From Lepidodermella squamata (taxonomy: Eukaryota > Animalia > Gastrotricha): DNA of 64,000 bases. The notes below the pieces were generated by a model. That model was not told the DNA's origin. It made no database searches and saw only the letters and a program-made list of their open reading frames with translations. Position 1 is the stretch's first letter, and each line of letters begins with the position of its first letter. Made by a program: the position numbers and the translations under genes. The stretch is from contig JBLDXI010000032.1 of NCBI GenBank assembly GCA_047495785.1, positions 248,001 to 312,000 on the forward strand, given 5' to 3'. Of the stretch, positions 1-34,391 are shown one piece after another.

Positions 1-1972
1 TCGCGAGTTCGTGGTAAAATTAAAACCTTCGAGAAGCAACTGGTGGAGGTGGATAGCGGCTGGCGAGACGCGTCTTACGTTGAGACAAGCGCCGTGCGTT
101 TGAATAGATGTTGCAATATGTTGAACTGGACGTCGATAATCGACAGTTTTGCTAAAAATGTCGGCTATAACGAGATGCGAATTCAGATTTTCTACACTAC
201 ATCTACGTTTTGTTCGTATTTGACGAGGCTGTGCAAATTTATGGAAAATCAAATGAGCACAAAACAGGTGAGTGGAAAAACAATAATAATTAAATTAAAT
301 TAACTATTATTTTTTTTATTTTTTAACTTCTTAAACTTTTTAAAATTTGAACCGAAATACCAAGATCAACCGTATCAAGACAATTTTGAGAAAAAGTTTG
401 AAATTAAAATTGAAATTCTAATTTCATGATAAAGGAATGATTTTTGGTTTCTATTTCAAAGTTCTCAAAAGAAAATCTAGCACCAATTTTGGCTGGATGG
501 GTCTAAAATTTCAATATTCCTACTTCAAAATTGATGCACCCAATTACCCTTGGATTTTGTATTACCTAGTATGCCCTCAATTATGTAGGTAGGCACAATT
601 TCAATGTTAATTTCTATAAGTCGGGTGACATCGAAAAAATCACTGATTTTTGGAATCGATACTCGATACGGTAAATCGATATCGGCTCAGCCATCAATCG
701 GTTGGGCAAGATACCCAATAAAAAGTTTAGATTCCAAAGTTAACTTCAACGTTCAGCTCGGGAAACCATTTATTTGGGGAAATTGAGTGCTGGAACCCCA
801 TTGGAACCCCGAATTTAGCGCGCCCAACTTAGGTTATTAGGCGCCATAATATTATGATGATATTTTTTATTTTTTTTCCCCAGGGACGTGATATTCTTGA
901 AGACTACCTCATCACAAAAGCTTTCCTACCTTACGTCGATATAATCAACCAAACCGATGCCCCGAATATCACAGCTGAGCTGCAACAAGCCTGTCTCACC
1001 GAAACCGCTACCTCCCTCCCATTCGCAGTAGCCTCAATCTACCGAAAACACCTATTCGACGGCTGGCAAAATATAGACGAACTGCGGCAAATCGCGTCAG
1101 AAATCATCACAAGCTATTCGACAGCAGTATCCGACTCGCCGCTATTGTCGCCTGGGTCAAAGTCTGAAATTAGGTCAATTTTGGACAAAACCGCATTTCG
1201 CGTCGGTCCGCCTAATTGGGCGCTCAATCAAACGCAACTAAACCAATTTTACCAACCGTTTAATTTCGTTACTAATGCTAGTTATTTTACTAACAAACTT
1301 CAAGTTCGAGCATTTAATTTTCGCCAACATTTACGGGCCGTTTTCTCGGGCAGTCGGAACTTCGAACTAGGCACCATGTGCCCGTTAGACGTTGCCGTTG
1401 CGATGTTTAACCCGACTAATACGGTGGTCTTTCAATACCCGGCAGCTCAGAGGCCGAATTTCGACCCTGAATATCTGGACGCTGTTAGGTTCGGCAATGT
1501 CGCGACAGCTATTGCGCACGAACTTGGCCACATTTTAGCGCGATTTCTCGACCGAAATTCGCCGTTCTACATCCGCGACGACCCTCGATTACTCTACCAG
1601 CACAAGTCTTGCATAGTCGATTTCTACTCATCCCTCGCAGGGTCGTATAAAATCGATAGAAATTTCGCGCAGGGGACATATCTGCAGGACATTGCCGATG
1701 TTGTAGGCCTCCAGGTGGCCTATCGTTGGTACCAGCGGCGGCGGAATCGGGATAACCAGTTTGATAGGTTGTTTTTCATTGCCCAGGCGCAGGGCTATTG
1801 TTCGGCTATGGCGCCTGGTATAACCTGGGCGGATTTAGCGGCTTCAGAACCGACTTACAGCCCAGCTCCACTTCGAGTTAGAGGAGCGGTTATGAATAAT
1901 AAAGACTTTGCGGCGGCTTTCGAGTGCCGGCCAACGAGAAAATTTTGTTCGATTTTAAACAATTACCAATAA
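1..1972 (+). CDS. Neprilysin/M13 family peptidase-like protein, 5'-partial (exons <1-267, 884-1972)
   Basis: Frame 1 is open from base 1 (KTFEKQLVEV..) to a GTGAGT donor at 268; TTTCCCCAG acceptor ends at 883, phase 0. HELGH (HExxH), FG..ATAIAHE, QDIADVVGL, LFFIAQAQ.YC and SP..LRV.G..N.KDFA.AF.C are M13 C-terminal motifs. AATAAA overlaps the stop codon. Confidence 0.9.
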
Positions 1973-4292: not shown

Positions 4293-6593
4293 ATGGCTGT
4301 AATGACCGAGTTTTGCCGCTTGTTAGCTGCTGTTGCCCTGCTATCAAGTATCGTCGAGGGGCAATTGAAAAAGGTGCGCACCCTGAAATAAAATTGCTAT
4401 TTTATCATTTAATTACAGACCAGCGATGGCGGGTTTCAGTGTTCGGACGGGAAGAAAATTCAGCCGAGTGACCGTTGCGATGGTTACAACGACTGCCCGG
4501 ACTCAGCTGACGAGATGAACTGCGAATGCAGGGATGACTCTTTCAAATGCGCAAATACCATCTGCAAAAGCAAAGAGTTCGATTGATTCGGGATAATAGA
4601 TCCGTTAAATTTGTTTGTCTATATTAGTTTCCGCTGTGACGGTAAAGATGATTGCGGGGATAATAGCGACGAGTTGAATTGCCCGCCCTGCCGCGTTGAC
4701 CAGATGCGTTGCTCGAATACGAAGTGTGTCAATTTGACCCAGCGCTGTAACGGAAATGACGACTGCCCCGACGGCGCTGATGAGTTTAATTGCCCTAAAG
4801 CAGGTCAGTGCGATGATAGGTCACAGCAATAAAATGGCTTCTAACCTACTTTTTTCGTAACCAACAGCATGCACGTCCGATGAATTTTTGTGTAAAGACG
4901 GCTCCTGTATTAACAAGGATTACGTTTGCGATGCAGATGACGATTGCGATGATGGATCGGACGAACAGAACTGCTCGAATACGCCCTGTGATAGTGCTAC
5001 ACGGTTCAAGTGCTCGGACGGCAAATGTCTCGACGAGAGCCGGCGATGCGATGGAATGAAGCATTGCTCGGATGACGAAGAAAACTGCCCCTGCCTCACG
5101 TTCAAATGTGTCAGCAGTGGAATATGCCTGGGGGATTCGAGTCAAATTTGTAACGGCGAGAAAGACTGCGAAGACGGGTCAGACGAAAGCAACTGTTCGG
5201 TAAAATTAGTTGTCCATTAAGAACAAGTGAAAAGTGGGGTTTAGCGAGTTTTCCAGCGCAAATCTCAAACGTAATTTTTTGACTTGAAGAAGGAGGATTC
5301 TTGAGGATTCCAAGATATTCTCTTTTAAGGATTTTGAATTTTTAAATTTAATTATCCTTAAAAGTGTCGCTGAGAAGTCTTATCGATTTAAGATTACACA
5401 TAGAGACACTAGCCTGACTCCGCTTGACACTCTGTGGCGGATTAACAAGTGATGCAATACAAATTTAAAATTTAAAAATGAATAATAATATATAGGCCCG
5501 CTTTTTCAAAACTTGAAAGCCCATTTTCGTTCGACTTCTCGCTCATTGATCTTGAAACCGGCATCAGAATCTTACTATTATGTCAAAATTGTGCCGAACC
5601 CCACTTTGGTCAGATTTTTTCAACCGTCAGACAAAATATTCCTCTTATGATTTCGACATTTTCAGAATTGCCCGGAAGACCGTTCTTTCCAATGCAAAGG
5701 ATCATCGAAATGTATCAGTGAAGAGTTTGTCTTCAATTGCTGACCAAAAAATCGATCAAATGAGTCTTATTTTCATTCAGTTACCGTTGCGACGGAGAAA
5801 ATGATTGTCCATTAGGACAAGACGAAATAGGCTGTCTGACTTGCAGCGGCCTTGATGATAGAACTTTCAATTGCCCGAATACAACGCAATGCATTTATGC
5901 TGCTGATCGATGTGACGGCTCCGAAGACTGCGAGGATGGTGCCGATGAGAAGAACTGCCTGGAAGTAACCTGCCAGGAAGGTAATTTCCGCTGCAGTAAC
6001 GGTGTTTGCCTGCCAATGAACCGAGTTTGCGACGGCGAGAAAGATTGTCCGAACGATGAACTTCAAGACTGCTCGTGCGGTTCCGGTGAAGTTAAATGCC
6101 CTGCTGACGGGGTGTGTATTAGTTCCTCTACGATATGCGACGGTGACAAAGACTGCGATGATGGCTGGGATGAGTCAACCTGCTCGAAATGCCCCGCCGA
6201 TCGAGCTTTCAAGTGCTCGAACAGTACAAAATGCATTCCAGAAAGGTGAGTTTTTAAAGACTTCATGTTGATTAAACTATATTCGATTGATCGAATAGAT
6301 ACAAATGCGACGGTGATTTCGTAAGTTGAAAACAACAGTAATTTTCCCTTTTGTTATTTTTTAATTTAAAGGATTGCGGAGAAGATGATAAATCCGATGA
6401 AATTTGCCGGCCTTGCACTGCTTTTGAATATAAATGTCTTGCCGGGAATTGCATCCCGACTGAGAAGGTGTGTGATGGCAGCGAAGACTGTCGACATGGA
6501 GATGAGGAACAAAATTGCACCGCTTGCAAAGGACAAGCCAAATACTGCCCAAGATTTCAGCAATGCGTTTCGTCCGACTCGGCATTGTGTTGA
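4293..6593 (+). CDS. Secreted LDL-receptor class A repeat protein, copy 2 (~12 LDLa repeats; exons 4293-4373, 4419-4576, 4628-4803, 4868-5199, 5666-5724, 5781-6245, 6299-6320, 6372-6593)
   Basis: Signal peptide [23 protein letters not shown]; LDLa repeats in ORFs 4611, 4888, 6016 and 6351; exon structure matches copy 1, including the 22-nt microexon. Confidence 0.88.
5210..5635. mobile_element. ~420-bp insertion in an intron of LDLa copy 2 (probable non-autonomous DNA element)
   Basis: Absent from the homologous 53-nt intron of copy 1; ends TTGTC...GACAA; subterminal inverted match AAAGTGGGGTT / AACCCCACTTT. Confidence 0.55.
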
Positions 6594-7155: not shown

Positions 7156-10100
7156 ATGGCGCCCAAAGTTGCGCGACGCAATTTGGAGGGAAAATTGACC
7201 AATAAGGAGACAACGCCGCGGCAGAGGAATAACAAGGAACAAAACGCGCCGAAGCAACAGAAAAATCGGAAGCAAAGTACTGATCCGAAGCAGGAGAAGC
7301 CGGTCAAAGATCAGAAGAAGAATAAAGTCTCCCCGGAGAAGAAAGGAAAGCCACAACCTCTTACCAAACCTGCTGGGAAAGAGGCACCTCAAACGGGTCG
7401 AATTTCTAAAAAACAAGCTAAATCTAATTCAAAGGAAGCAACCCCTAAAGGAACAGTAAGAATTGTTTCCTGAATTTTATTTTTTATTTTTTATCTATTT
7501 TTAGCCTAGAGGCGAAGCGAAAAATATCAAAGAATGGGATATCGGCAAAATCAAGCCCAACGCCGTCGTATTTATGAGCTACGCCCGTAATTTAGGTCCA
7601 TTTTTAACAGACGAACTGCGAAAACTTGCCGAATTTCTCCGCCAATACCCGTTTAGAACGGTTTGGTTTACTACCGATGACCACGAGAGAAATTCCGATG
7701 AGCACTTAGAGGCCCTTACCGAGGCTGATTTATTCGTAGCCTGCCTAACGCAAGCGTATGCTTCCGATCGAAGTTGCATGCGCGAGTTTAAGCTGGCGAT
7801 CGAGAAGCAGAAACACGTGTTCCCGCTGAATTTAGAGGGCGAGCATTTTGTGCTGCCCAAGGCGGTTAAAGCTAGGCTCAACGAGCAGAATAGTTGGCCG
7901 TCTTTCGACTATTCGGCTGGCTTTGACGCGGCACATGCGGCGGCGATTTATGAGGTCATTTGCAAGCAAATTGCCGAGGTCACCCTATCGCAGTCGAAAA
8001 AATTGAAAAGCCAAGGAGGCTTGTACGAGTAAGTTGCGTTTTAGAAAAGCTGGAAAAAATTGGGGAGCTAGAATTTGAATACCCCATATTTTTACTACTT
8101 ACGGTTACCGAGAAATACCAGTGTCAAGTTGGTCACGTGACCTTACCTGGTGTCACACTGGTGTCACCTGGGCGGTTATCTCGAGAACGGTGATAGCTAG
8201 GAAGCCGCTCTCAAAGAAAAAGGTCATAGGTGATACTTCGTGCAAAATCGATTTTGATGACACTTCAGTGTAGTTTGGTGACAGTCCCAAAAAGGGTTCC
8301 TAGCTTACGCCATGCCGACGAGACACTGGTCATTTATCCGTTTCACAAAATTTATACGATTTCCCAGGGCGGAGAAATGCCTTTTAGGCACCCTGGGGTT
8401 GAATTCGCCCTAGAGGATTTTTTAAATTGGTCGAAAAAGCTACCATTGGGCTCTTTTTAATCATTTTTAATCCAATTTTTTCATTTTATTATTCAATTTT
8501 AAATTTTGATTAATATTGGCTAATTTTTTTTTATATTTTACAGGTTAGCATCATCTAGCGTTCCTATGTTCGCCGTAAAATACTACGAAAGGTCCGAAGC
8601 TCAAACCGCCCTGTTGAATCTACTCCGAAAAGTTGCTCAACGCCCCTCCCTCGACGGCGTCATGCTCGTGTACGGCGAGGCCGGCGTCGGCAAATCAACC
8701 ACCGTCGGCCATTTATTCGACGACGAAGACTCGCGGCGCACGCTCGTCGACGAATTCCGAATCCACGTGGTGCTCTACGTCAACTGCATCGCCTGGCCGG
8801 GCGAGATGACGTCACACTTCGACGACGCCGCTAAAATTACCTTCACCGAAAAAATCACGCAAATCGCTCGAATCGAGGCGCAACAAACTTTCGACTCAAT
8901 CAGTCAAGTCGTCGCTCATTTCGAGAAGACAAAAAAGCGAATTTTATTCGTACTCGATGATTTGTACAACCCGAATGTCGTTAGTTACGTGAAAAGTCAG
9001 GCGAAATCATCGATTTGTCTCGTTATAACTCGAGACCCTATTCCATTCGTTCAATCTAAGGTCGCGAGGAGTCAGCGGTTATTTAAATTGAAAGAAATGC
9101 CTCATCGAAGTTTAGTTGGCTTGTTAGAGGAAACTTACGGCCTACGTCGCAAAATCAGCCAGGAAACAATTCTCGAAATTGCGGAAAATTCTAGTAATTT
9201 ACCGATTTTAGCCGAAATTCTCGCAAATCACCACGAAGAGGAAAATTTCGATATGGAAAAAATGCTCGACACCAGTCTCTCGACATCTGGCGTCGAACCT
9301 GAAAAGGACCTTGTCATTAAATCATTGGCCGAATCGCTAGATTTAAGTTTAAATCAGTTGCTAAGCACAACTGATTGCTTAAATTATTTCGCGTTTCTAT
9401 TTTTCGACGCTGAAGAGGCGATTGAACTGCCTGAATTGGGCGTGTTATGGGGCGTCGATAATCAAAAGGCCGATGAAATGTGTTCGATCTACGAGAGGAA
9501 AGGCCTCCTGAGAAAAATCGAAAGTCTAGTCGAGGACACATCCGCCTTCCTGCCTCGTCTTATCGGCCGAAATGACACTGTCCCTCGCAAAAAATGGATT
9601 TATTTCGTCCACCGGGCGTTATGGGCTGTTGCCTACCGAAACGCGGCGTTGAAGGTTGGTCCGTTCCAGACCCAGATTCAGCACAGTAGCAGTGCGATAG
9701 CGTTGATTCAGTGCGGGTTAATGCCACGCACTGATGAACACGTTCGCGCGTTTTGCGTCAAGTGCCTGCGCGGTCACGCTTGGGCGCTTCTTGACCGGAC
9801 GCTCGCGAAACTGCAGCCGGATCTGCTCGGCGCGGTTCGCGAGGCGTTTCACAACGATGTCGAGGCGATTCGGAAGGTTTTTGCGAAGCAGACCGCCCTA
9901 TCTTGGGCGGCTAGTCACGGTCACGCTGAGACGGTGGTTTGGCTATCGAATAAGTGCCCGGATGCTGTTCGGCAGCCGGATGCTCAGGGCCGCACGCCGT
10001 TATTAGTCGCGGCGCAGAATGGCCATTATGAGGTTGTCAAGTTTCTGGCTGGGAAGTGGAGTGATGCGATTAAAACGAGGGATCGATTGGGGGAGACGCC

Positions 10101-12148
10101 GATTTTCGCAGCTGCGTCGAATGGCCATTTGCTAATTGTTAGGTATTTGGACTTCAAAATGCCGGAACTTGTCGAGGTACAGGATTGGCAGGGTCGAACT
10201 CCGCTTCATCAAGGTACCCGCATAATTTTATTCATCTTTACCCATTAAAAATGTTGAAAATCAAAATTAACTCAGCGAGATGCTTAATGCGTGAACCGAT
10301 ATCTTGAACTTGAAAAAATGGCTCTGAAATGTAAAAAAATAATTGAAATTTTAAATACTTGAAAAATTATTCTAAAATTGAATTTTGAAAATCAAAAAGT
10401 GAACGAATTAGTTATATTTCAAAAAAAATGGAAAAATTCATTATTTTTGAAATTTTTAGAAATTTGAATTTAATTGAAAATTAAAATTAATTAAAACTAA
10501 TTAATTAAAAAAATTTATCTGTGATAATTTTGTTGATAATAATTTTTTATTGCCTGTAACTTTACTTTTTGTCTCAATTTTTTAATGATTTTTTATGATA
10601 TTTCTCCTTTTTCAGCTTCCGCTAATGGGCAGTTGTCAACGGTCGAATTTCTATCTGAGCGAAGCCCGGATTGTTTACTCACCCGTGACCGGGCCGACCT
10701 AACCCCGCTGTCATGCGCCGTTCGTCACGGTCAAATCGACGTGGTGCGATATCTCATCAAAACCAGCCCCGGGGCTGTTCGAATGTCCGACAAATCGAAC
10801 CGAACCCCGTTATCATTCGCCGCAGAGACTGGTTCAATCGACCTGGTCAAACTCATCGACGAACACTGGCCTGAGGCGGTTAAAATCGAGGGTAAAGACG
10901 GCCAATCGCCGCTATCATGGGCTGCGGCGAATGGCCATCTCGAGGTTGTTAAACACCTTGCGAAAATGTGGCCGGATGCGTTGACTCGAACAGACAGATT
11001 CCGCCGGACACCTTTAGCCCACGCCTCAGTTCGCGAGTCTAGCCTAGATTTGGTTAAATACCTCTACGAAGCGTGGCCTGAGGCCGCCCGCATGCCGGAT
11101 AACCGCGGCGAGACGCCGATTTCACGCGCGGCTGCACACGGCCGGTTGACTGTCGTCAAATTCCTGGCCGAGCGTTGCCCCGAGTCGTACAAAATCGTCG
11201 ACGTTCACGGTCGAATAGCCCTGCACCACGCGTGTCGACACGGCAAGTTGGAGACGGCGAAATTTTTAGCCAGAAAATGGCCGGGTGCTCTGATTTTCGG
11301 CGACATTGACGGCAAAAATCCGATCGCCTGGGCGGCGCAGTACGGCCGGGCTGAGATTTTGAAGTTCTTCTCCGCGAAATGGCCGGAATTGGTGAAGGCC
11401 GGCCAGGTGGCGGATGTGAAGGGGCGAACACCGCTGTCACACGCGGCGGCTAATGGGCATTTCGATGCGGTTAAATGGCTCGGGGATAAGCTTACTTCAG
11501 AGGCGTTTGAGGCCGTTGACAGCGAAGGATTGACGGCTCTAGCGATTGCGGCTTATAATGGGTTCGTTTTTCTATAAAATTTATCTCGGTTTTAAAAATC
11601 GGTTGTAGTTCAATTTTTCAAAAATTAAACTTATTACGAAGGGCATTTCCAACCTTGATCACGATTTCACTGGAAAAAAATTGAAATTTACCGCAGAGAA
11701 CCCGGAAAAACCCGATGGTAACTGGTTTGGTAATTTTCGGTATTTTACCCGGTTTGACGAAATTTCTCCGAATTTTTTTATTCATGTTGTCAAGTTCCAT
11801 TCCGATGGTATTTAAATTTTTCTGGTCATGATCGGCTTTCATTTTAGACTTCCTAATTTTTTATCCGTGTGTTTCCGTTGGTGCGTTACTTATGGGACAT
11901 ACTTATGGCTTTAATTATTCAGGAATTATTCAGGAAAGAGGAAAGGGGGTTCTCATTCATAATTTTTCAAATTGAATTTTTTTTATTTCAGACACCTTGA
12001 TGTCGTACGATACCTGGCGAGGCGGTGCCCTTTGACTGTCGAACTTTCAGACTCAAAAGGTCGGACTCCTCTCGCGTGGGCAATCAAGCGTGACCAAACA
12101 GCCGTCGCTAACTTCCTTCGAGATCACTATCCACCTAAACGGCATTGA
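7156..12148 (+). CDS. TIR - NB-ARC/STAND NTPase - ankyrin repeat (14x) NLR-like protein, ~1198 aa (exons 7156-7455, 7505-8028, 8544-10213, 10616-11561, 11992-12148)
   Basis: Lys-rich N-terminus; TIR box VFMSYA and AYASDRSCMREF; Walker A GEAGVGKST, Walker B ILFVLDD, CLVITRD, GLPL-like NLPILA; 14 TPL..AA..GH ankyrin units. All four introns are GT-AG and phase-compatible (3597 nt total). AATAAA at ~12179. Confidence 0.9.
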
Positions 12149-12627: not shown

Positions 12628-14640
12628 ATGGCGATGACTCTGGCGCAAGATGGCGAGATGGTGTTGTCGCGGCGGCTTGAAGCAGATCAAAGCAAGCAGG
12701 CAACGGCTGTCACCGTTCAACCTGTTGCCGCGGCGAGTGGAAGTAAGCATAATAATAATCACACGCCGGCAGATGCCGGGCCGCGCGATGACCAGCGCCA
12801 GCCGTTATTGCTGGCATCATCACAGCCGCCGCCGCCGGCATCGGCAACAGTTGCTGCATCAGTTCCTGCTCCACCCGCTGAAACATCACCTGCTCTAGAA
12901 ACAAGTTTGCCAAATGCGGGCGCATGCGAAAAAATCGGTGAGCTGATTGCTGAATTTATAAATATCTCAATATCTTTTATATAAAAATCGGTTTTACATA
13001 GGGAGGGACAAAAATAAGTTTTCTATTCACACGTCATATTCCGGATTTCATAAATAAAATTTAAAAATTCTACGAATTTGATTTTTTGCGCTATTATAAA
13101 AAATGCATTAATTTTAATTTTCAAATATAAAAAATTTGTCAATTTTTGTCACTTTCTTAGTTTGAATTTGGTTTCGCTGAAATCACACATTTATTAGTCT
13201 ATCTTTGGCAACTTTGAAGTCGAATTTTTCCTTTTTTTATTTTAATTGTAATTTTCCTAAATTTAGCCAGCGATAATGAAACCAGCGAGGACTCTGAGGA
13301 TGAAGATGAGTCGGAGGACGAAGCCTTACCGCCGCAGTTGTCCCACATCGGGCTAACTCACCGCCCATTACCTGGCAATATCGCCCTTCCTCAAACTCTG
13401 CATGCATCAGCATCAAGCTCAGCACCCGCCTTGATGCCGCCTCCGCCGCCACCGAACGATCAAAGTTACTATCAATACTACTACAATTACTACTACAACC
13501 AACAGGTGCAGTCGGCGAATTTAGCTACGCCGCACGTGGCGCCGTCGCCCCTCTCGCCGCTTGGCTTCACGTTCGACCAGGCGCCTAATGCTTATAGTGG
13601 CTATCAACAGCCTTATTCTGGGTATAATAACGGCAATTACCCGGCACCGGGCGACATGCAGCCGACTAATTACTACTACGACCAATATCAATACCCGAGC
13701 TATCAATATCCAAACTTCTCAGGCGCAACGAATTTCTATCAGGTAATTTTTAGAATAAAAATAAATAAATTAAATTTCACGAGATTTTTCTTAGGGTTCA
13801 ACTGCGGATACAACAAGTGGTAACGCGATGGGTGTGAGGTCGGATCTTTCTGCAACGAAAGCGAAGGGAGTTGTAAAAAACCAGCCAACCGTGACGGCGG
13901 CCACCCGAAAGAGGAGGGGAGGGGGTGTCGTTTCATCTCGAGCTGCCAGGTCAAAATCAGCAAAGACCAGCCCTCCGGATTCGAAGCCTAAACCAGCCCA
14001 ATCTGTTACAACTGGTGCGGAGAATTCGGAGCTGGCTGAAAGCGATCAGTCGGAGAGTAGTGATAGAAACAGCTCGAAGCCTCAATCGCAACACCGGCGG
14101 CGCATAGCTACCATGGAACAGCGCCGAGCTGCTAATGTAAGGGAGAGGAAGCGAATGATGAACCTGAATGAATCATTCAACATCTTGCGGTCTCGAGTCC
14201 CAACTTTTGCCTATGAACGTGAGTTTCAGCAAATTAAAAAAAATAGTTAAAATATTTACAATTTAAAATCGTGAATTTGATGAAAGGCATGGGTTTCTAA
14301 AATCCAAAAATATTTACCTGATTTTGAAAAAAATTGATTAAATTTAGAAAATTAACTTAAATAGCTTTTTAGAAAATGATTCGTTTTTTCAGGAAAATTG
14401 TCACGCATCGAAACTCTTCGCCTTGCGATCATGTACATTCGCTTCATGACCGATATCGTAGTTAATGGCAAGCAGCCGAATGAGATTCAACTAGCCGTGA
14501 CTACACCCTCCCAACACAACCGCCAACACATTCCGAAAGGCTCGATGTCAAGCCGATTAAATGACGATGACTCATCAATGTCCTATTCTTCCTCGTGCCA
14601 ATCAACTCCGATGAAAAAATCTTCTCAAAATTACCGATGA
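12628..14640 (+). CDS. ferd3l: bHLH transcription factor, Fer3/NATO3 (FERD3L) type, ~485 aa (exons 12628-12937, 13267-13742, 13795-14218, 14393-14640)
   Basis: [41 protein letters not shown]|[19 protein letters not shown] matches the FERD3L/Fer3 bHLH ([22 protein letters not shown]); phases consistent; AATAAA at 14678. Confidence 0.88.
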
Positions 14641-14741
14641 AATTGCGGCGCAGCTTTCTCTAAGTTATATTACTAGCAATAAATAAACAAGGCTGAAAGA
14701 TGATTACTGAAAATATTTCAAAAGTTTAATTGCACTTCTTA

Positions 14742-16310
14742 TCAGACAAAAATCACTTCGAGGTACAGGCAGGTTTTTGATTGAAATAATTTCACAACTT
14801 TTTCGTCCGAATCAATAGCGCCGTTGCCGTATAAAGCGGCGCGTTGTGTTGTTCCCACTTCGTAGAGACGATAAATTTTCAGCGCGGGAGGATTCTGGCG
14901 GTAATAGGCGTGGTAGCTAGGTCGCCGGCCGATTTCATCCCGCTCTCTCGTCCATATTGGCCAATAGCCGTCCGGGGTCGATGATTTGAAAGATTCAATT
15001 ATGAGTTCAAAAAGTATATTAAGACTATTCAGAGGTTTTGAAGAGTAAATTTCCAAGTAATGAAATAATCCTCGCTCACGAACGTGAAATTTCACAAGTT
15101 CACAAGGCGAAGTTGGATTTTTCTCAAGGCCCACGGCCTCTTTGTCAATTGAGCAATAGCATATATCATTTCGCAATTCCTGGCTTCGAATCCGATCAGC
15201 AACGTGGATACAAAGCCGGCAACTTGAGTGGACAATCGCAAGATCGATTAGGGCGAGAAATTTTTTAGACGGCCCTTTTTCCTTCCATAGTAACATGTTC
15301 GAATATGCCTCGTCATTTTCAGCTAAATCTCGCATAATTTGAGCGACCTGATCCACCTCGTCCAGCGATTTGAGGTGAATTATCGAATTTTCACTCGGTT
15401 CATAGTCGCGAATATTTGGGGCGCCTATCACTATTGGGACCGTGCCTTCAACCAGGCTTTGATAGAATTTTTCCGTAACGTAATCTAACTCATTCGAATT
15501 TTCAAAGGCGAAATGGAATTTGTATCGGCCTATTATTTCCTCCTTCGAGCCGTTATTCGGGTAGATTTTCGGTTCTGAGAAACACGAGCCGTAAAAATCA
15601 GCGAGATTTGCGTCGATTCTACGAAAATCAAGAGCCGCCTCCAGGCGGAAATTCTGCGCGTGGCAATTTGAAATGAAAGCCGTCGCGAGTGGGTACAGCG
15701 TCTCGTATTTAGGCCGGACAGGTTTCATAAAATCGTGTAAAACCCATGAATAATACGGCACTGGTACGTCGCTGTCGAGGCGAGTTGTCATGACAATATC
15801 AACCAGTGATTTCGCGTAATTCAGCTCAGTGTTCGGGAAGTAGGCCGGCGATTCCATAGATCGAATGACGGAGAATCCTCTGATCTGCCGGTCATGGTTG
15901 AATTTCTCCGACAGTAAGTGAAGTTCGACAAATGAAGCGTCGAATTTAGTGACGAAAAAATGCGAAAAATTCGCTGAAGCGTGACGCCTCCGCTGGGGTG
16001 AAGTTAGGGCGCTCGACGGGTAGTGGAAACACCCGACAGCACAGTCGATCTCCTTGACGTCATCTACATCAGCGCCTCCGATGAGAACGGGTGATTTCAA
16101 AAAATCACGACCTCGCGACGATTGCGCGCCATAATTAAGGTGGACGCATTTTTCGAACGCGTCACGCGCTGTTGGCTTTGGCCGGTGTGATAAGTAGCGA
16201 TTTCTGATTTCAGTATCGGTTCGATTCGAGTATTGAACGTAGATGAACAGCTGGAGTGAAATTGCTGTTGCGAAAATTGCAAAGTAAAACACCCGTCTTC
16301 GCCTGGCCAT
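14742..16310 (-). CDS. GT10 alpha-1,3-fucosyltransferase resembling plant core N-glycan FucT, intronless, 522 aa
   Basis: Type II membrane start MARRRRVFYFAIFATAISLQLFIYV; MES, AFISNC, YKFHFAFENSNELDYVTEKFYQSL and VPIVIGAPN motifs; C-terminal VHSSCRLC..HVRERG..TQR.ALY..C..LEV.FV extension. Confidence 0.93.
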   Translation of the reverse strand: MARRRRVFYFAIFATAISLQLFIYVQYSNRTDTEIRNRYLSHRPKPTARDAFEKCVHLNYGAQSSRGRDFLKSPVLIGGADVDDVKEIDCAVGCFHYPSSALTSPQRRRHASANFSHFFVTKFDASFVELHLLSEKFNHDRQIRGFSVIRSMESPAYFPNTELNYAKSLVDIVMTTRLDSDVPVPYYSWVLHDFMKPVRPKYETLYPLATAFISNCHAQNFRLEAALDFRRIDANLADFYGSCFSEPKIYPNNGSKEEIIGRYKFHFAFENSNELDYVTEKFYQSLVEGTVPIVIGAPNIRDYEPSENSIIHLKSLDEVDQVAQIMRDLAENDEAYSNMLLWKEKGPSKKFLALIDLAIVHSSCRLCIHVADRIRSQELRNDICYCSIDKEAVGLEKNPTSPCELVKFHVRERGLFHYLEIYSSKPLNSLNILFELIIESFKSSTPDGYWPIWTRERDEIGRRPSYHAYYRQNPPALKIYRLYEVGTTQRAALYGNGAIDSDEKVVKLFQSKTCLYLEVIFV

Positions 16311-17153
16311 ACAAAAAATCAGTTTTTCCGGGATGATGTCAAGCAACCATGCCGTAAATAAATTCGAATAATTAGTCGTTATAGCTAAAAATTGAACACC
16401 TGCGAGCCTCAATTTCGGCGGATAATCCGCATCATAATAACGCAGAGCCGCAAAATCACCCCGAGCGCGGATTTTCTAGAGCGTGGCTGATTAAATCGAT
16501 GAATATAACTGGGAAAAATACTGTTTTTGCTAATATAGCGCGTTCCAAGATTTTTGCACTTGTCGATGAATGTTTAGCACGCTGTCCAACTTTCGATACA
16601 GCTAATAGAGAGCCAATCCTACCAATTATTTTTTGCTGGCTCAATCTTCACTGGGGTATGACGGGTAGTAAATATTCCTTCGATTGCTCTTGAATAATTA
16701 TTAGCCAACAAAATATTTAACCCCGATGGATACAAATCAAATAAGGGAGCAGACATTTACATAGCTCTGGATTTCGTTATTGACTGCGACATATCGTCAA
16801 GGTATTAGCAGGCATGCTCGGGCTCGGCATTACAATGGATTTTATCACACGCGCATGTAATATGGTACATATCAAATGTTGGGTAAATATTGATATACGG
16901 TATATTTAGCTGTTTTATTAACTGCGCGGCTTCTCTTTTTCGGCGGCATAAATCGGCTCCAAATACTTGAGTTGGCTAAACAAACAACCCGAAATAAAGG
17001 AGATGGAGAATCTGATACCGCTTAAACCCGGTTAACAAGTGTTTTTGCCAAAAATAGAAAATCGAAAAAACAGGCCAACATTGCACAGATTTTATTACAA
17101 CTCAATGTTTCGAACCCCAAATTCTTAAATATATGAAAAATCCATTTTTGAGT

Positions 17154-18770
17154 TCAAATTTTGTATTTGATGAACAATTTCTGATCGATGGTTTCCGGCT
17201 TTCCAGTGACATGTCGTTCGATACACTCGTTGACGAAAAGACCAAGCGGGTCCACTTTCGATCGAATCGCCAGAAATTTGTCCCAATGCGGGTAAAGGCT
17301 TCGAAGCTCATCCGGAGTCAGTTTGAAATACTGGAAAAAAATTGAAAAATTAATTTAATTTAATTTAAATTTTTTTAATTACTTTAGCCCAATGAGGCCG
17401 TCCGCCCAGTGAGTACATCATAGATTCGTATTTTTGCCAATATTCCTCTCGTAAGGGAGGTTCAATGCCGTAGGGTCGAAACATCAAAATGTTGATGTAG
17501 CAGACTTCTTGGTAGCCAGAAGCGGGAGACAGATAGACAGGACCATCAGGCCCGATAAATCGAATCTCGACTGGAAAATGAGCCCGAACACCTGGGCTCG
17601 AGCAAATTTTCTCCAGCTCAGTCAAAGCAATGGCAGCTTTAGACCTAAAATAATTTAATTTTGAAAATATTTCTATTATTTTTTTTTAATTTTACCTAGG
17701 TATCGCCCATTCGGATACATGCTGCTTGAATAAGCAATCGTAGTTGAATACTTTGTAGGAAATATCCTCCTTAACTTTCCTTTTGCTGAACAACAACGTG
17801 AAAAACAGCTGATTCACGTAAGGGACAATAAATGGGAAGTAGACCGCAAAAAGCAGTACAAACTCGAGAAGATAAAAGCCAATTAGCCTATCCCAGAAAT
17901 AGTTGTTCAGTCGAGATAACAAATCAGGGTCAGCTTTCTCACTCGGCGCTGTGATCGATTTGACCCGGTAATTTCGGATGATTGACACGTTATCCGTATT
18001 AGGGAACCAACACAGCCGGACATGGTCGGCTGAATCGATGATTTGGTCGAGATTTTTAATGGTTTCCCGCATCGACCCAGGCTCTTCGATGTAGGCGAGT
18101 CGGAACAGGGGTTCGACTTTAAGGGTGACTTGGGTAATCACGCCGAGACAGCCGAGGGAACAAACCGCGGCGAGGAATAGCTCCTGGTTATGGTCCATTG
18201 AACACCGATGAATTTGCACATTTTCCGGGCTATCGTGAGGGCAAATAATTTCTAGTTCCTCAATCTGAAATTTTAGCAAATTTCGAAATTTTCGAGGTAA
18301 AAAAATAACAATAAAAACCATGGAGGAAAAAGATCCGAAATTTTTGCCAGTTCCATGTGTTGCTGTGGCTATTGCGCCGCCTATTGTCTGCTCTGAAATT
18401 GATCCAAGCGACGAAATTGCTAGGTTGTATTTTTCTGATAGGATCGTGTTCAAATCCTCGATAGTTATGCCGGCTTCCATTGTCACCAACCAGCGGTCCT
18501 GATCTACGCTTAGCACTCTGTTCAGTTTGTTGAGGCTGACCATGACGCTATCGGTGCAGTACAGGTCGGAGGGCGAATGGCCAGATCCGACAACTCTGAG
18601 CTTTTTCTTTGCTTGGCACACGTCTTGGACAATCTTGAAAAAATGCGGAACATTCTTCATAAAAAAATTTAAAATAAAAAATCCACCTTAACGACTTGAT
18701 CTTTGCTTTCCGGCTGCAAGTACTGCGAGGGAGAGCAGGCGAATGTCTTTGACCAGTTTGTTTTCAACAT
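17154..18770 (-). CDS. gulo: L-gulono-gamma-lactone oxidase / ALO family FAD oxidase, 468 aa (exons 18770-18687, 18633-18319, 18264-17696, 17644-17383, 17330-17154)
   Basis: NWSKTFACSP start, VVGSGHSPSD (covalent-FAD His), TIGGAIATATHGTG, SLGCLGVIT, HFPVEIRF, GGRPHWAK, DP.GLF.N; four 51-54-nt GT-AG introns, total 1407 nt in frame. Confidence 0.93.
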
Positions 18771-26522: not shown

Positions 26523-28793
26523 TCAATCACTGCAGTTTCTCAGCATTTGCTTGTAAATATTGTCCACTCGCGGCAGGTGAATTTTATGAGACCTAACAAC
26601 CATCGGAGTGATACGCTCCCAGTCCACTTTCATGAGAGCAGCCAGCGCCATGCCGCACGCCAACACGTCGTACAGCACCGTTTGCTCGGGCATGCTCGAC
26701 AACTCTCGCTCGGTCAAAACTCGCGTCGACTCGCGAAAATTCTGAATCGCATACACGCAGTTGAAAATGAACAGCCGAACGTAGTCTTCATCGTCATCGA
26801 CCCCCTTAACAACAGTTCGAGCCGCAATCTTCTCACACTGGTCACCGCCTCCGTTCAACAGGTGGTGAATGATCAAGCACGTATTGGCTAGCTCGTCGTG
26901 ATTTTGCGTGTTGAACCCTTCGAATAACACTCGAGCCGTTAAATCTTCCAATTTTTTAGGATCGGACGCCAGAAATTGGCGAACCTTCGATTTTTCAACT
27001 TGAATCACCGATGCGAGTAGGAAAATCGAATTTCGATACGACGCTTTCACTGAGCAGTAATCTTTCGCGTCGAGAATTCGCCACGAAATTTGAGGCAGTA
27101 GAAAATCGAATTTTGCTAAATTTTCCGCAAAATCTCGAGACATCAACACGTGCCAGCCAATGCATCTCAAAGCGGCACAATGCGACTTTTCACTGGCTGA
27201 TTTTATCGGAAATTTCGCGATTTTCACCAAATTTTCGCTTAAAACCACCGAATTATCAGTCCCGTTCCACTCTCTGATATTTTTATCCGGACGACGATGG
27301 CCCATATAGCTATGAATCATCGGGTCTAGAATTTTAATCAAATGATATAGCCCGTCACTTTTTCGAAATTTCGCATTCCTTTCGGCGAGATCGGTGTAGT
27401 ATTGAAGTTTTTTTGTTAGATAAAACCAGAATTCAGGCCGTTCGTAACTCGCCTGGAAAACAGACTCATAGACCGCCCGCCAGAAATACACGCAATTACC
27501 AGCCGGTTCACGCTCGGTCGGGTCGAAATTCTCGCGAAAATCGAATTGGCTCGCAATCGCGAGGTGAGCGACTGATTTCACCCTCGCGTCGTTCGGCTTG
27601 ATTTTCGTCAACGTATCAATCAGCGAGAACTCGCGGTCCGCAAATTCTGACTCGCGTAGATAGGCCGAAATCAGAACGAGATCGAAGGGGAGCTTAGAAA
27701 TCGGCCCAAAAGGCATGACGCAAAATCCATTGACAATAAACGAAGCCATCCAGTTGAAATCATTACAGGGCTCGAATTTTCGAATGAAATGATTTCGAGT
27801 CAATTCGTGTTGATACAAATTCGCCAGATTTTTCGCGAGGTAGTAATAGATCGACTGGCCTAGACCAGGTCGGGTGACTACAGCCTTCGCGCCTTTACTG
27901 GTCGCTAGATAACAGGCGAGTTTATTGAGAAAATTGCGAAAATTCGAATTTTGAAGGAATGAATTCAGATAAGCAGCTATGCAATTATCGAATAAATAGC
28001 TGTAGCACATCAAAATTTCTCGAATTAAACGAAGATCGGCCAATTCCAGCGAGTCGAAATCGAAAGAAGACATTGAAGCCAATCGCAAAATTTGCGGATT
28101 TTTCGAAATCAAATTCATGAACATTTCGTTGAATCGAAACATTCCATCCTCATCGTAAGAAACCATTCGACGTGAAATGTAGCACAGTTCGTCGATAACT
28201 TCATCGGCTGTTAAATTTCTGGATTCAAGCAAATTTGTCAACACATTTCTCAAGTCGCGGAAAATGCTAGGAATAGCGTTGAATTCGCCGATTGTTCGAT
28301 CGAGTTCATCACCCGGAAATGAGCTGCCCTTATTGCATAAAATCAACGAAGCCAGGTCGACATGGCCCAATTTCGCATAGGAATTCGCGAAAATGTAGTG
28401 GCCTTTTATCCAATCGTCGTTCAAAATCGTGCTGAAATATGCGTTTGAAGCCGCCTCCTTGAATTGGCCCAATTTTTCGTGGCAAAGAGCGATATTCGAG
28501 TATAAACGGTAGTTGTAAGGCCGTAGTTTAGCTGCTTTGCGGTATTTTTCCAGCGCCTCAGCGATTTTTCCTTCTTTGAATAGCGCATTGCCGTCTTCGT
28601 GGGGTTTCGTTACATCGGCCGGTTCGTCGCTGTGGCCAAGGCTTTTTCGAATTTCGGCGTGAATTTGAGCGGCTGATTCTGGGCTGGTGATACGATTCAT
28701 AACTTCAAGGATAGCCTTGCTATCGGCGATTTTTGCGGATTTTCCATCGATTTTTTGCTCGAAAGCCAAGTCGCCAAATAGCAATTCATACAT
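26523..28793 (-). CDS. TPR + helical/ARM-like protein, paralog A (756 aa, intronless)
   Basis: Three TPR motifs (HEDGNALFKEGK..YSNIALC..WIKGH); family motifs PCNDF and ERPEFW; AATAAA on the coding strand at 26424-26429. Confidence 0.88.
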   Translation of the reverse strand: MYELLFGDLAFEQKIDGKSAKIADSKAILEVMNRITSPESAAQIHAEIRKSLGHSDEPADVTKPHEDGNALFKEGKIAEALEKYRKAAKLRPYNYRLYSNIALCHEKLGQFKEAASNAYFSTILNDDWIKGHYIFANSYAKLGHVDLASLILCNKGSSFPGDELDRTIGEFNAIPSIFRDLRNVLTNLLESRNLTADEVIDELCYISRRMVSYDEDGMFRFNEMFMNLISKNPQILRLASMSSFDFDSLELADLRLIREILMCYSYLFDNCIAAYLNSFLQNSNFRNFLNKLACYLATSKGAKAVVTRPGLGQSIYYYLAKNLANLYQHELTRNHFIRKFEPCNDFNWMASFIVNGFCVMPFGPISKLPFDLVLISAYLRESEFADREFSLIDTLTKIKPNDARVKSVAHLAIASQFDFRENFDPTEREPAGNCVYFWRAVYESVFQASYERPEFWFYLTKKLQYYTDLAERNAKFRKSDGLYHLIKILDPMIHSYMGHRRPDKNIREWNGTDNSVVLSENLVKIAKFPIKSASEKSHCAALRCIGWHVLMSRDFAENLAKFDFLLPQISWRILDAKDYCSVKASYRNSIFLLASVIQVEKSKVRQFLASDPKKLEDLTARVLFEGFNTQNHDELANTCLIIHHLLNGGGDQCEKIAARTVVKGVDDDEDYVRLFIFNCVYAIQNFRESTRVLTERELSSMPEQTVLYDVLACGMALAALMKVDWERITPMVVRSHKIHLPRVDNIYKQMLRNCSD

Positions 28794-33800: not shown

Positions 33801-34391
33801 AGGAGATAACATTCGAGCGATTGTCGCATCCAAATCACTGCTATCAGCTACTTTGAACGAACTCCGGCTCAGGGTGGCCTTAGCACCGGCAATATGCTCT
33901 TCCAACAAATCGCAGTCACTTCTCGCAAAATTTTCCTGGATCAAATCGATGTAAGATAGGGCTAGTTGAGCATAGCCCATAAGCGTGTAACTTTCAACAA
34001 GTTTAACCTGCGATTTCAGCCATTTTTTATCGAGAAATCGCGTCACAACCGACGAATAAACAACAGCTTCTTCATAGCGGCCGAGTTTGAAGTTGCACAA
34101 CGCAATGTTCGAGTACAGCTTATAATCACCAGGCGCTTCACCAATAATACTTTTGTAAATCGCTATAGCCTCAGTGTATTTACCCTCGCCGAATAGCATG
34201 TTAGCTTTGGCGTGAAGCGTCGGATTAGCCGGTCGAGCTACGTTGTTATCACCTCGGCATTCGATAGCCATTCTTTCTTGAATTCGTTTCGCCTCAGCCG
34301 GAGTGCTGATTTGTTCGATGATTCTTAAGGTGGACGGACTTTCTGGGCTGTTGAAAAACGCGTCCAAATATTGAGTAGCAAGAGCGGCCAT
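30833..34391 (-). CDS. TPR + helical/ARM-like protein, paralog B (738 aa; exons 34391-33450, 32107-30833)
   Basis: TPRs in ORF 33414-34391; GTAAGT donor at 33449 and TTTTCAG acceptor at 32108, phase 0; RPGVW motif in the second exon. Confidence 0.87.
32319..32947 (+). other. Two diverged ~55-codon coding-like repeats antisense inside the intron of paralog B
   Basis: LLALAEPMEQKQDELR..ELSMI..EFHP...W..IFGPRSLDAVAKKL vs LLALISLMEQKQGELR..DLSLI..EFFP...W..VFSPRSLGAVAKEL. Confidence 0.6.

What the first reader, a model, noticed from the sequence alone, without database searches (positions are those of the whole stretch)
14742..16310. Intronless plant-type core alpha-1,3-fucosyltransferase: horizontal transfer candidate
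Seen: a 522-aa single-exon gene among intron-rich neighbours. From recall of Arabidopsis FucTA/B, it is collinear with them through RSMES, DIVMTT.L.SDVPV.Y.SW, AFISNC...NFRL.A and GPS..F.ALID.A.VHSSCRLCI.VA.RIR.QE. It also has the extra C-terminal subdomain (VRERG.F, PIW..ER, TQR.ALY, C...EV.FV) that typical animal GT10 enzymes lack, ending soon after C..C. Inference: acquisition from a plant, alga or protist, giving plant-like N-glycan core fucosylation. It sits between bona fide animal genes, which argues against contamination.
Basis: partly seen in the sequence, partly recalled or inferred. Interest (0 to 1): 0.75.

Follow-up and report, generated by a model that had tools for sequence, protein, structure and literature searches.

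The report
Plant-type fucosyltransferase gene in an invertebrate
A small invertebrate genome carries an intact, expressed, intron-free gene for a fucose-adding enzyme built like the plant enzyme AtFUT11; it was not taken from land plants, and whether it was inherited or came from another eukaryote stays open.

Summary
Window 14742-16310 (minus strand) is one uninterrupted 522-codon gene for a type-II GT10 fucosyltransferase. It is collinear to its last residue with Arabidopsis FUT11 (PDB 9s6a, E 5e-79; model TM 0.84), including the N-terminal acceptor subdomain and the ~155-residue subdomain behind CxxC. The catalytic Glu and 8 of 9 GDP-fucose contacts are kept; three N-glycan contacts are changed.

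The gene belongs to the host. Divergent DNA contigs of another run join it to both flanks, composition and codon use match the neighbours, and a cDNA-like run covers it unspliced while the GULO neighbour is spliced.

In about 15 billion proteins its only close kin are four proteins on environmental contigs, one contig with animal-type genes. These five form a 99/99 clade of their own. The wider family also holds plants, green algae, diatoms, a raphidophyte, Rozella and an aphelid.

- Nesting in land plants: rejected (AU p 0.0003).
- Sister to land plants: not rejected (p 0.16).
- Grouping with early fungi: not rejected (p 0.37).

No named animal appeared among the best hits. An old transfer from a non-plant eukaryote and vertical retention with wide loss both remain open. 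The scan reached the same conclusion earlier for paralogues on other DNA of this genome.

The parts
14742..16310 (-). Complete single-exon coding sequence of the GT10 fucosyltransferase (522 codons plus stop at 14742-14744)
   Evidence: ORF list; Pfam PF00852 E 2.4e-28; 9s6a E 4.6e-79; cDNA-like run X2 covers 14730-16326, has zero depth at 16356-16928, and shows no listed skip joint in the ORF
16230..16292 (-). Signal-anchor (type-II membrane) helix, residues 7-27, behind a short MARRRR cytosolic tail
   Evidence: Read from the sequence; the AF2 model has a helix at 2-41. The topology is inferred by analogy with Golgi glycosyltransferases
15729..16157 (-). N-terminal acceptor subdomain (residues about 52-194) with Cys55, Cys90, Cys94 and the catalytic base Glu153 (codon 15852-15854) in RSMES
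   Evidence: Residue map against AtFUT11, with domain limits and the role of Glu158 taken from PMC12929593
15270..15728 (-). GDP-fucose (donor) Rossmann domain, residues about 195-347, with F212 S214 N215 R222 K256 N271 E280 K281
   Evidence: Pfam PF00852 covers 208-379; 8 of 9 AtFUT11 donor contacts are conserved and R248 is Ser245 here
14745..15269 (-). C-terminal subdomain, residues 348-522: A358/H361/S362 acceptor contacts, CxxC 364-367, Cys386, VRERG, PIWxxER, TQRxALY, C-x3-EVxFV end
   Evidence: Aligned to the end of 9s6a; Foldseek 9s6a TM 0.84 by target; found in 45 of 151 representatives scanned, that is the best 150 plus P0004
13828..14640 (+). Convergent neighbour: bHLH gene in two exons (about 13828-14218 and about 14390-14640); its stop lies 101 nt from the FucT stop
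   Evidence: Pfam HLH E 5e-8 on exon 1; exon 2 ORF reads [14 protein letters not shown]; X1 contig 14385-15206 bridges it to the FucT. The splice sites are inferred
17113..18700 (-). Upstream neighbour on the same strand: L-gulonolactone oxidase-like gene with four mini-introns of 51-54 nt
   Evidence: Pfam FAD_binding_4 and ALO; spliced 1324-nt contig of run X2 with GT..AG ends, read on the minus strand

Best explanation
This is a functional host gene for a Golgi-type (type-II anchored) GT10 fucosyltransferase of the AtFUT11/FucTA architecture.

How it most likely works. The donor Rossmann domain binds GDP-fucose. Glu153 in RSMES acts as the catalytic base. The acceptor is held between the N-terminal subdomain and the C-terminal subdomain, and these are tied together by conserved cysteines. 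The most likely reaction is transfer of fucose in alpha1,3 linkage to a GlcNAc, probably the innermost GlcNAc of N-glycans that carry a GlcNAc on the alpha1,3 arm. The contacts for the mannose core are altered, so acceptor preference may differ from the plant enzyme.

Origin. The gene belongs to a small, old, intron-poor clade known so far only from this genome and four proteins on environmental contigs, one of which carries animal-type genes. That clade is one deep branch of a pan-eukaryotic family. It does not derive from land plants. I lean slightly towards an old transfer from a non-plant eukaryote into this animal lineage, followed by duplication. Vertical retention from the opisthokont ancestor with wide loss is nearly as likely.

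Shown: the sequence, the fold, the conserved residues, integration in the host, transcription, and the shape of the tree. Inferred: the linkage, the acceptor, the Golgi location and the origin.
For: - Gene and family: intact ORF; GT10 Pfam hit above cut-off; full-length alignment to AtFUT11 at E 4.6e-79.
- Fold: AF2 model pLDDT 80, and Foldseek's best hit is 9s6a with TM 0.84 by target.
- Residues kept (roles from PMC12929593): E153, M152, Y186, H361, S362, A358; 8 of 9 donor contacts; Cys55/90/94/367/386.
- Motif: a near match to the 'Fuc-T C3' motif shared by insect and plant core enzymes (PMC4675719): TAFISNCHAQNFRLE.
- Integration: X1 DNA contigs, 1-4% divergent, span 14385-15206 and 16015-16676. 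X2 covers the ORF, shows nothing in the upstream spacer, and carries a spliced GULO.
- Constraint: 14 synonymous against 8 non-synonymous among 22 listed differences, 15 of them at third codon positions (P 0.0009).
- Composition: GC3 and codon use match the neighbours.
- Tree: clade of window + P0001-P0004 at 99/99; land plants apart at 100/99; AU tests.
- Family range: Stephanodiscus, Heterosigma, Rozella, Amoeboaphelidium, Chara, Closterium, Mesotaenium, Coccomyxa.
- Animal context of clade mates: P0003/P0004 lie beside INTS15 and CCSMST1 genes.
Against: - No enzyme assay or glycan data exist for this protein or its clade.
- Three AtFUT11 acceptor contacts differ: Y163 is F158, E197 is L191 and D120 is K86. 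The loss of E197 is shared by the whole clade. The donor contact R248 is Ser.
- The RNA evidence rests on contigs of a run whose RNA nature is only guessed, so transcript ends and strand are not shown.
- Named animal GT10 sequences (insect FucTA, nematode FUT-1, FUT10/11) could not be fetched, so their position relative to this clade was not tested.
- The host phylum is not established here. The GULO neighbour hits Naegleria, fungi, mites and mammals about equally at ~40%.
Confidence: 0.7

Rival explanations
1. Old horizontal transfer from a non-plant eukaryote (green or other alga, protist, or early-diverging fungus) into the ancestor of this animal lineage, followed by duplications and, in some copies, intron gain.
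For:
- The named relatives are all plants, algae, stramenopiles, early fungi or amoebae.
- All five clade members are single ORFs, whereas the neighbours carry about one mini-intron per 400 nt.
- Other notes of this scan report further protist- or plant-type genes in this genome (unchecked).
Against: - No donor clade is identified: the backbone is a polytomy.
- The family is present in Holomycota, so an opisthokont origin needs no transfer, and that grouping is not rejected (p 0.37).
- Composition is fully host-like.
- Only 30 of 150 representatives could be looked up for names.
Confidence: 0.45
2. Vertical inheritance: a FucTA-type gene of the opisthokont (or last eukaryotic) ancestor was kept in this little-sampled animal lineage and lost, or diverged beyond recognition, in most other animals.
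For: - The family spans Archaeplastida, stramenopiles and Holomycota, with more distant kin in Naegleria, Pelomyxa and Leptophrys.
- The quick tree put the clade, weakly (82), with Rozella and the aphelid group.
- The AU test does not reject opisthokont monophyly, and the likelihood cost (6.3) is smaller than for a sister position to land plants (12.9).
- The clade is internally deep, at 40-46% identity.
Against: - It needs many independent losses across well-sampled animal phyla.
- No holozoan protist or named animal member was seen.
- All known clade members lack introns.
Confidence: 0.37
3. Acquisition from a land plant or other streptophyte.
For: Land plants dominate the hit lists at 38-44% identity. 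A sister position to the land-plant clade is not rejected (AU p 0.155).
Against: - Land plants form a 100/99 clade without it, and nesting inside them is rejected (p 0.0003).
- Similarity to plants is no higher than to Coccomyxa or to unnamed protist-like proteins such as P0005.
- The clade carries its own derived features: E197 lost, VPVPY, and a GRR insert after PIWxxER.
Confidence: 0.07
4. The enzyme is active but uses a different acceptor from the N-glycan core (for example antennal GlcNAc/LacdiNAc, another glycan, or a protein domain as in FUT10/FUT11).
For: - E197 (which contacts the beta-mannose) and D120 (alpha1,3-mannose) are not conserved in any clade member, and Y163 is Phe here.
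- AtFUT11 itself has side activity on LacNAc (PMC12929593).
- Animal FUT10/11, long annotated as alpha1,3-FUTs, turned out to be protein O-fucosyltransferases (PMC11949838).
- The genome holds several paralogues, which allows specialisation.
Against: The catalytic Glu, Tyr186 (chitobiose contact) and His361/Ser362/Ala358 (GlcNAc on the alpha1,3 arm) are all kept. The overall architecture is that of the only solved core alpha1,3-FucT.
Confidence: 0.3
5. Contamination or misassembly: the gene belongs to an alga, plant or protist in the sample.
For: The best named hits are plants.
Against: - The stop codon lies 101 nt from the stop of a bHLH gene.
- A divergent DNA assembly (X1) joins the gene to both flanks, and X2 holds it together with the spliced host GULO.
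- GC, GC3 and codon use match the neighbours.
- The best plant identity is only about 40-44%.
Confidence: 0.02

Closest known systems
Arabidopsis thaliana FUT11 (FucTA), core alpha1,3-fucosyltransferase, PDB 9s6a (PMC12929593)
   Same: Full-length collinearity over 141-522 plus the Cys-rich N-terminal part. Same three-part architecture: N-terminal subdomain, donor Rossmann domain, C-terminal subdomain. Catalytic Glu in RSMES; 8 of 9 donor contacts; His361/Ser362/Ala358 and Tyr192 equivalents; five disulfide cysteines; TM 0.84.
   Different: About 37-42% identity. Y163F, E197L, D120K and R248S. A 10-residue insert after PIWxxER and a longer loop at residues 95-125. It lies outside the land-plant clade.
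Environmental proteins P0001-P0004 (ENA metagenome contigs; P0003 and P0004 are a tandem pair beside INTS15 and CCSMST1 genes)
   Same: Same 99/99 clade. All are single ORFs. They share the loss of E197, the VPVPY motif and the GRR/GRQ insert. Contig L002 has a GT..AG mini-intron of about 60 nt, like the window's genome.
   Different: Only 40-46% identical, so they are old paralogues or distant orthologues. The organisms are unknown. P0003/P0004 carry long inserts in two loops.
Insect core alpha1,3-fucosyltransferases (Drosophila, Apis, Bombyx FucTA / Fuc-T C3)
   Same: GT10, type-II anchor, the motifs YKFxLAFENS, DY(I/V)TEK and CxxC, and the core-FucT motif AxF(I/V)SNCxARNxRLQ, which is nearly matched here (PMC4675719).
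   Different: The insect enzymes end about 40-50 residues after CxxC (Bombyx: Cys408 of 450), are multi-exonic, and are 33% identical to the plant enzyme in the catalytic region. This protein has 155 residues after CxxC. No insect sequence could be fetched for a direct alignment.
Vertebrate FUT10/FUT11 (POFUT3/POFUT4)
   Same: GT10 members with a C-terminal extension tied by an extra disulfide (PMC11949838).
   Different: They are ER protein O-fucosyltransferases for EMI domains and are multi-exonic. They did not appear among the best hits here. Whether their extension is homologous to this subdomain was not testable.
FucTA-type proteins of Rozella allomycis and Amoeboaphelidium occidentale (early Holomycota)
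   Same: They carry the same C-terminal subdomain and catalytic residues. A grouping with the window's clade is not rejected.
   Different: They keep E197. No supported sister relation was found.

Membership tests
CAZy GT10 / Pfam PF00852 alpha1,3/4-fucosyltransferases | Match to the GT10 catalytic (donor) domain above the curated cut-off | tested here: met
   PF00852: 99.5 bits against a cut-off of 23.9, residues 208-379
CAZy GT10 / Pfam PF00852 alpha1,3/4-fucosyltransferases | Donor motifs YKFxLAFENS and DY(I/V)TEK, and a CxxC | tested here: met
   YKFHFAFENS 263-272, DYVTEK 276-281, CRLC 364-367
AtFUT11/FucTA-type core alpha1,3-fucosyltransferases | N-terminal acceptor subdomain that supplies the catalytic base (Glu158 in RSMES) | tested here: met
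   E153 in RSMES, invariant in the alignment; Cys55/90/94 conserved
AtFUT11/FucTA-type core alpha1,3-fucosyltransferases | C-terminal subdomain after CxxC (AtFUT11 residues 348-501), linked to the N-terminal part by disulfides | tested here: met
   Aligned to the last residue of 9s6a; TM 0.84; C367 and C386 conserved
AtFUT11/FucTA-type core alpha1,3-fucosyltransferases | Conserved N-glycan contacts (Y163, Y192, E197, D120, M157, H361, S362, A358) | tested here: inconclusive
   5 of 8 kept (M152, Y186, A358, H361, S362). Y163F, E197L and D120K differ, and the E197 loss is clade-wide
AtFUT11/FucTA-type core alpha1,3-fucosyltransferases | Transfers fucose in alpha1,3 linkage to the Asn-linked GlcNAc | not testable with these tools
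   Needs an enzyme assay or glycomics
Horizontally acquired gene (plant donor) | Nested with support inside the donor clade | tested here: not met
   Land plants 100/99 without it; AU p 0.0003 for nesting
Horizontally acquired gene (any eukaryotic donor) | Absent from the recipient's relatives (other Metazoa and Holozoa) | tested here: inconclusive
   No named animal among the best hits of three searches, but only 30 of 150 representatives could be looked up for names, the host phylum is unknown, and Holomycota do have the family
Horizontally acquired gene (any eukaryotic donor) | Physically integrated in the host genome and expressed | tested here: met
   Bridging DNA contigs of X1; coverage in the cDNA-like run X2

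The most novel reading that the evidence does not exclude
An old eukaryote-to-animal transfer, from an alga, protist or early fungus, founded a multi-copy family of AtFUT11-type fucosyltransferases in a lineage of micro-invertebrates. This gave these animals a route to core alpha1,3-fucosylated (HRP-epitope-like) or related glycans that is independent of the insect and nematode FucTA enzymes.
Probability: 0.4. Interest if true: 0.55.

Novelty: new member of a known kind. Interest (0 to 1): 0.4.

Why it matters
Core alpha1,3-fucose is the cross-reactive 'plant/insect' glycan epitope. Animals known to make it use shorter enzymes, such as the insect Fuc-T C3 compared here. This gene shows that the full plant-type architecture, with both extra subdomains, also exists in an animal lineage as an old, expressed and constrained gene family.

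- It offers a natural variant of the AtFUT11 acceptor site (E197, D120 and Y163 changed) for structure-function work.
- It adds a data point to the question of whether such patchy genes in micro-invertebrates come from transfer or from differential loss.
- It does not overturn anything. The family is known, a plant donor is ruled out, and the same conclusion was already reached for paralogues in this genome.

Tried and rejected
- Language-model Atlas search and Atlas fold search: both only confirmed GT10 and a Streptophyta cluster. Neither said anything about FUT10/11.
- Scan of JGI metagenome contigs with the clade profile: 80 loci. By blastx the 41 best (L004-L044) were all plant, diatom or protist types and none was a clade member; the other 39 were not classed.
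- Third word search, spent on the GULO neighbour to place the host: best hits are ~40% to Naegleria, zygomycetes, mites and mammals alike, so it is not diagnostic.
- Atlas search with bHLH exon 1: only generic animal HLH clusters at 0.90.
- Context look-ups of unnamed C-subdomain-bearing proteins P0176, P0168, P0172, P0201, P0290 and P0222: compact microbial-eukaryote contigs with no sign of animals.
- Named animal GT10 sequences (insect FucTA, FUT-1, FUT10/11) could not be fetched, because the tools list only the best hits and these lie beyond the 150 best. The tree therefore lacks them.
- Mollicone 2009 and Rendic 2007 are not held.
- Papers on rotifer N-glycans or on rotifer fucosyltransferase transfer: nothing relevant.
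- The loose end at 14730 in X2 reads like a SMART cDNA primer (own knowledge). It does not fit a simple 3' end, so it was not used to define the transcript end.
Full report
**1. The observation**

The window holds one ORF on the minus strand, 14742-16412.

All eight quoted motifs are present at residues 150-154, 171-189, 211-225, 346-378, 410-416, 451-457, 488-494 and 514-522.

Pfam gives GT10 (PF00852) at 99.5 bits, far above its cut-off. It also gives a sub-threshold hit to the GT10 N-terminal family.

Against all PDB sequences the best match is Arabidopsis FUT11 (9s6a), E 4.6e-79, aligned from residue 141 to the last residue. Human FUT9 reaches only E 2.6e-16 over residues 151-344.

An AlphaFold2 model built on a 13-row alignment has mean pLDDT 80. 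Its best Foldseek match is 9s6a, with TM 0.84 by target over the whole chain. FUT9, mango FUT13 and H. pylori FucT cover only the core.

Only one copy lies in this window.

**2. Anatomy and likely mechanism**

Residues 7-27 form a hydrophobic helix behind a short MARRRR tail. This is the usual type-II signal anchor of Golgi glycosyltransferases (the topology is inferred).

I mapped the residues that the AtFUT11 crystal paper assigns (PMC12929593) through an Arabidopsis row. That row matches the paper's numbering at 23 of 24 sites with an offset of one.

| Role in AtFUT11 | AtFUT11 residue(s) | In the window protein |
|---|---|---|
| Catalytic base | Glu158 | Glu153, inside RSMES |
| Donor contacts | F216, S218, N219, R226, K256, N271, E280, K281 | all kept |
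| Donor contact | R248 | Ser245 (this site also varies among protists) |
| Acceptor contacts kept | M157, Y192, A358, H361, S362 | kept |
| Acceptor contacts changed | Y163, E197, D120 | Phe158, Leu191, Lys86 |
| Disulfide cysteines | C91, C124, C128, C367, C391 | conserved |

H361, S362 and A358 hold the GlcNAc on the alpha1,3 arm. Y192 holds the chitobiose.

The loss of E197, which binds the beta-mannose, is shared by the whole clade described in section 4.

The core-FucT motif AxF(I/V)SNCxARNxRLQ, shared by insect and plant enzymes (PMC4675719), reads TAFISNCHAQNFRLE here.

My reading is an active GDP-fucose-dependent inverting alpha1,3-fucosyltransferase that acts on a GlcNAc. N-glycan core fucosylation is the most likely reaction (about 0.55-0.6). 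A shifted acceptor preference is a real possibility (about 0.3).

**3. Host gene or contaminant**

- The stop codon lies 101 nt from the stop of a convergent two-exon bHLH gene.
- The start lies about 800 nt downstream of a GULO-like gene on the same strand.
- Run X1 (DNA-like contigs, 1-4% different from the window, so not the same assembled haplotype) has contigs spanning 14385-15206 and 16015-16676. These join the FucT to both flanks.
- Run X2 behaves as cDNA. A 1324-nt contig of GULO skips four stretches of 51-54 nt with GT..AG ends. Depth is zero over the spacer 16356-16928. The FucT ORF is covered from 14730 to about 16326 with no listed skip joint. This supports transcription of an unspliced mRNA with a short 5' UTR and the ATG at 16310. 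Because the data are contigs, strand, ends and expression level are not shown.
- Of 22 listed differences between the window and these runs inside the ORF, 15 fall at third codon positions (P 0.0009) and 14 are synonymous. The non-synonymous ones cluster in the loop at codons 380-404.
- GC, GC3 and codon use are like those of the neighbouring genes.

Contamination is therefore very unlikely.

**4. Relatives**

Two word-based searches of 5.8 billion clusters were run, one with the single protein and one with a clade profile. Both returned four or five unnamed environmental proteins first (38-43% identity), then land plants at about 40%. No named animal appeared in the best 120 of either search.

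The exhaustive HMMER search of 1.84 billion representatives gave 6850 hits, 116 of them at E 1e-30 or better. The top hits were the same ones.

Of the 151 representatives scanned (the best 150 plus P0004), 45 carry the C-terminal subdomain.

The 30 that I could look up by cluster gave these organism names (13 of the 30 carried none):

- Among those carrying the C-terminal subdomain: Stephanodiscus, Heterosigma, Rozella, Amoeboaphelidium, Chara, Closterium and Mesotaenium. Coccomyxa was already named.
- Among the remaining representatives: Naegleria, Pelomyxa and Leptophrys.
- None is an animal.

The contig of P0003/P0004, a tandem pair, also carries INTS15 and CCSMST1 genes above the Pfam cut-offs. 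As far as I know these are animal families. The contig also has a GT..AG intron of about 60 nt. The contig of P0001 carries an EGF-rich gene whose Pfam hit is below the cut-off.

A scan of JGI metagenome contigs kept 80 loci. By blastx the 41 best (L004-L044) were all plant, diatom or protist types; the other 39 were not classed.

Unnamed subdomain-bearing proteins on longer contigs sit in compact microbial-eukaryote contexts.

**5. Tree and tests**

I built a careful maximum-likelihood tree (LG+C20+F+G4 PMSF, 39 rows, 497 columns).

Rows left out: the long or degenerate rows P0245, P0215, P0222, P0201, P0224, P0230, P0290, P0192 and P0249; rows shorter than about 330 residues; and the remaining representatives without the C-terminal subdomain, apart from the seven kept as outgroup.

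- The window protein joins P0002, P0001 and the pair P0003/P0004 in a clade with 99/99 support.
- Land plants form their own 100/99 clade.
- All deeper branches of the subdomain-bearing family collapse into a polytomy.

| AU test | Likelihood cost | p | Outcome |
|---|---|---|---|
| Clade forced inside land plants | 58.6 | 0.0003 | rejected |
| Clade sister to land plants | 12.9 | 0.155 | not rejected |
| Clade grouped with Rozella and the aphelid group | 6.3 | 0.37 | not rejected |

The clade has derived features of its own: E197 lost, VPVPY in place of VPVGY, and a GRR-containing insert after PIWxxER.

**6. Interpretation**

So is the point that insect-type animal enzymes lack the long C-terminal part: in Bombyx the CxxC ends at residue 408 of 450.

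A plant donor is excluded. What remains is a choice between two scenarios:

- an old transfer from a non-plant eukaryote into this animal lineage (about 0.45);
- vertical retention of an ancestral opisthokont gene with wide loss in animals (about 0.37).

For transfer: the patchy distribution, the absence of named animal relatives in about 15 billion proteins, and the intron-free state of all five clade members in genomes that otherwise carry frequent mini-introns.

For descent: the family's presence in early Holomycota and across eukaryotic supergroups, and the lower likelihood cost of an opisthokont grouping.

I could not add insect FucTA, nematode FUT-1 or FUT10/11 to the tree, because the tools list only the best hits and these lie beyond them. 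That is the main gap.

**7. Earlier notes of this scan**

The scan had already flagged paralogues 2.5 kb and 16.7 kb before this window, and two more on another piece of the genome. Its follow-ups reached the same conclusion: an old branch of its own, not taken from plants, origin open. Other notes call the host 'probably a rotifer'.

I could test neither the paralogues, which lie outside the window, nor the host label. No close homologue from any named rotifer appeared in my searches, so the label remains a lead only.

**8. Verdict**

This is a real, intact, expressed host gene and a new member of a known enzyme type in an unusual host. It has a modestly altered acceptor site and an unresolved, possibly horizontal, ancient origin. 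Interest is moderate.

Noticed in passing
window 26523-28793, 33414-34391, 38137-39285, 46042-48276, 52706-53911, 56838-58382, 58800-60971 (all minus): Seven large ORFs share an N-terminal TPR block followed by a long part with no Pfam match. This looks like a tandem, lineage-specific gene family filling half the window.
   Followed up: no
window 17113-18700 (minus): The GULO-like gene has four GT..AG mini-introns of 51-54 nt, confirmed by a spliced contig. Its best protein hits are about 40% to Naegleria, zygomycete and chytrid fungi, mites and mammals alike. It is therefore not a diagnostic 'animal' gene and does not place the host.
   Followed up: partly
window 7156-12148 (plus): ORFs with TIR (7574-8032), AAA/NB-ARC/NACHT-like plus ankyrin (8566-10248) and ankyrin (10585-11577) domains together form an NLR-like gene.
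   Followed up: no
L002 435-4101 and 4161-7277: An environmental contig carries two tandem FucT paralogues (P0003, P0004) beside INTS15, CCSMST1 and a double HMG-box gene. It has an AT-rich GT..AG intron of about 60 nt near 4721-4780. It looks like an animal with mini-introns similar to the window's organism.
   Followed up: partly
window 14730 (run X2 loose end): A contig of run X2 continues into 23 letters that read like the SMART cDNA PCR primer (own knowledge). This supports X2 being a cDNA library. The orientation does not fit a simple transcript end.
   Followed up: no
P0192 (Chara) and P0249 (Mesotaenium): These streptophyte-alga paralogues of the family lack the catalytic Glu and most donor contacts. 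They are probably inactive pseudo-enzymes within the FucTA-type family.
   Followed up: no
window 51736-52206 (plus), 42889-43455 (plus), 854-1972 (plus): A zinc-knuckle (zf-CCHC) ORF that may be a retroelement gag remnant, a PAN-domain ORF, and a large exon of an M13 (neprilysin-like) peptidase.
   Followed up: no
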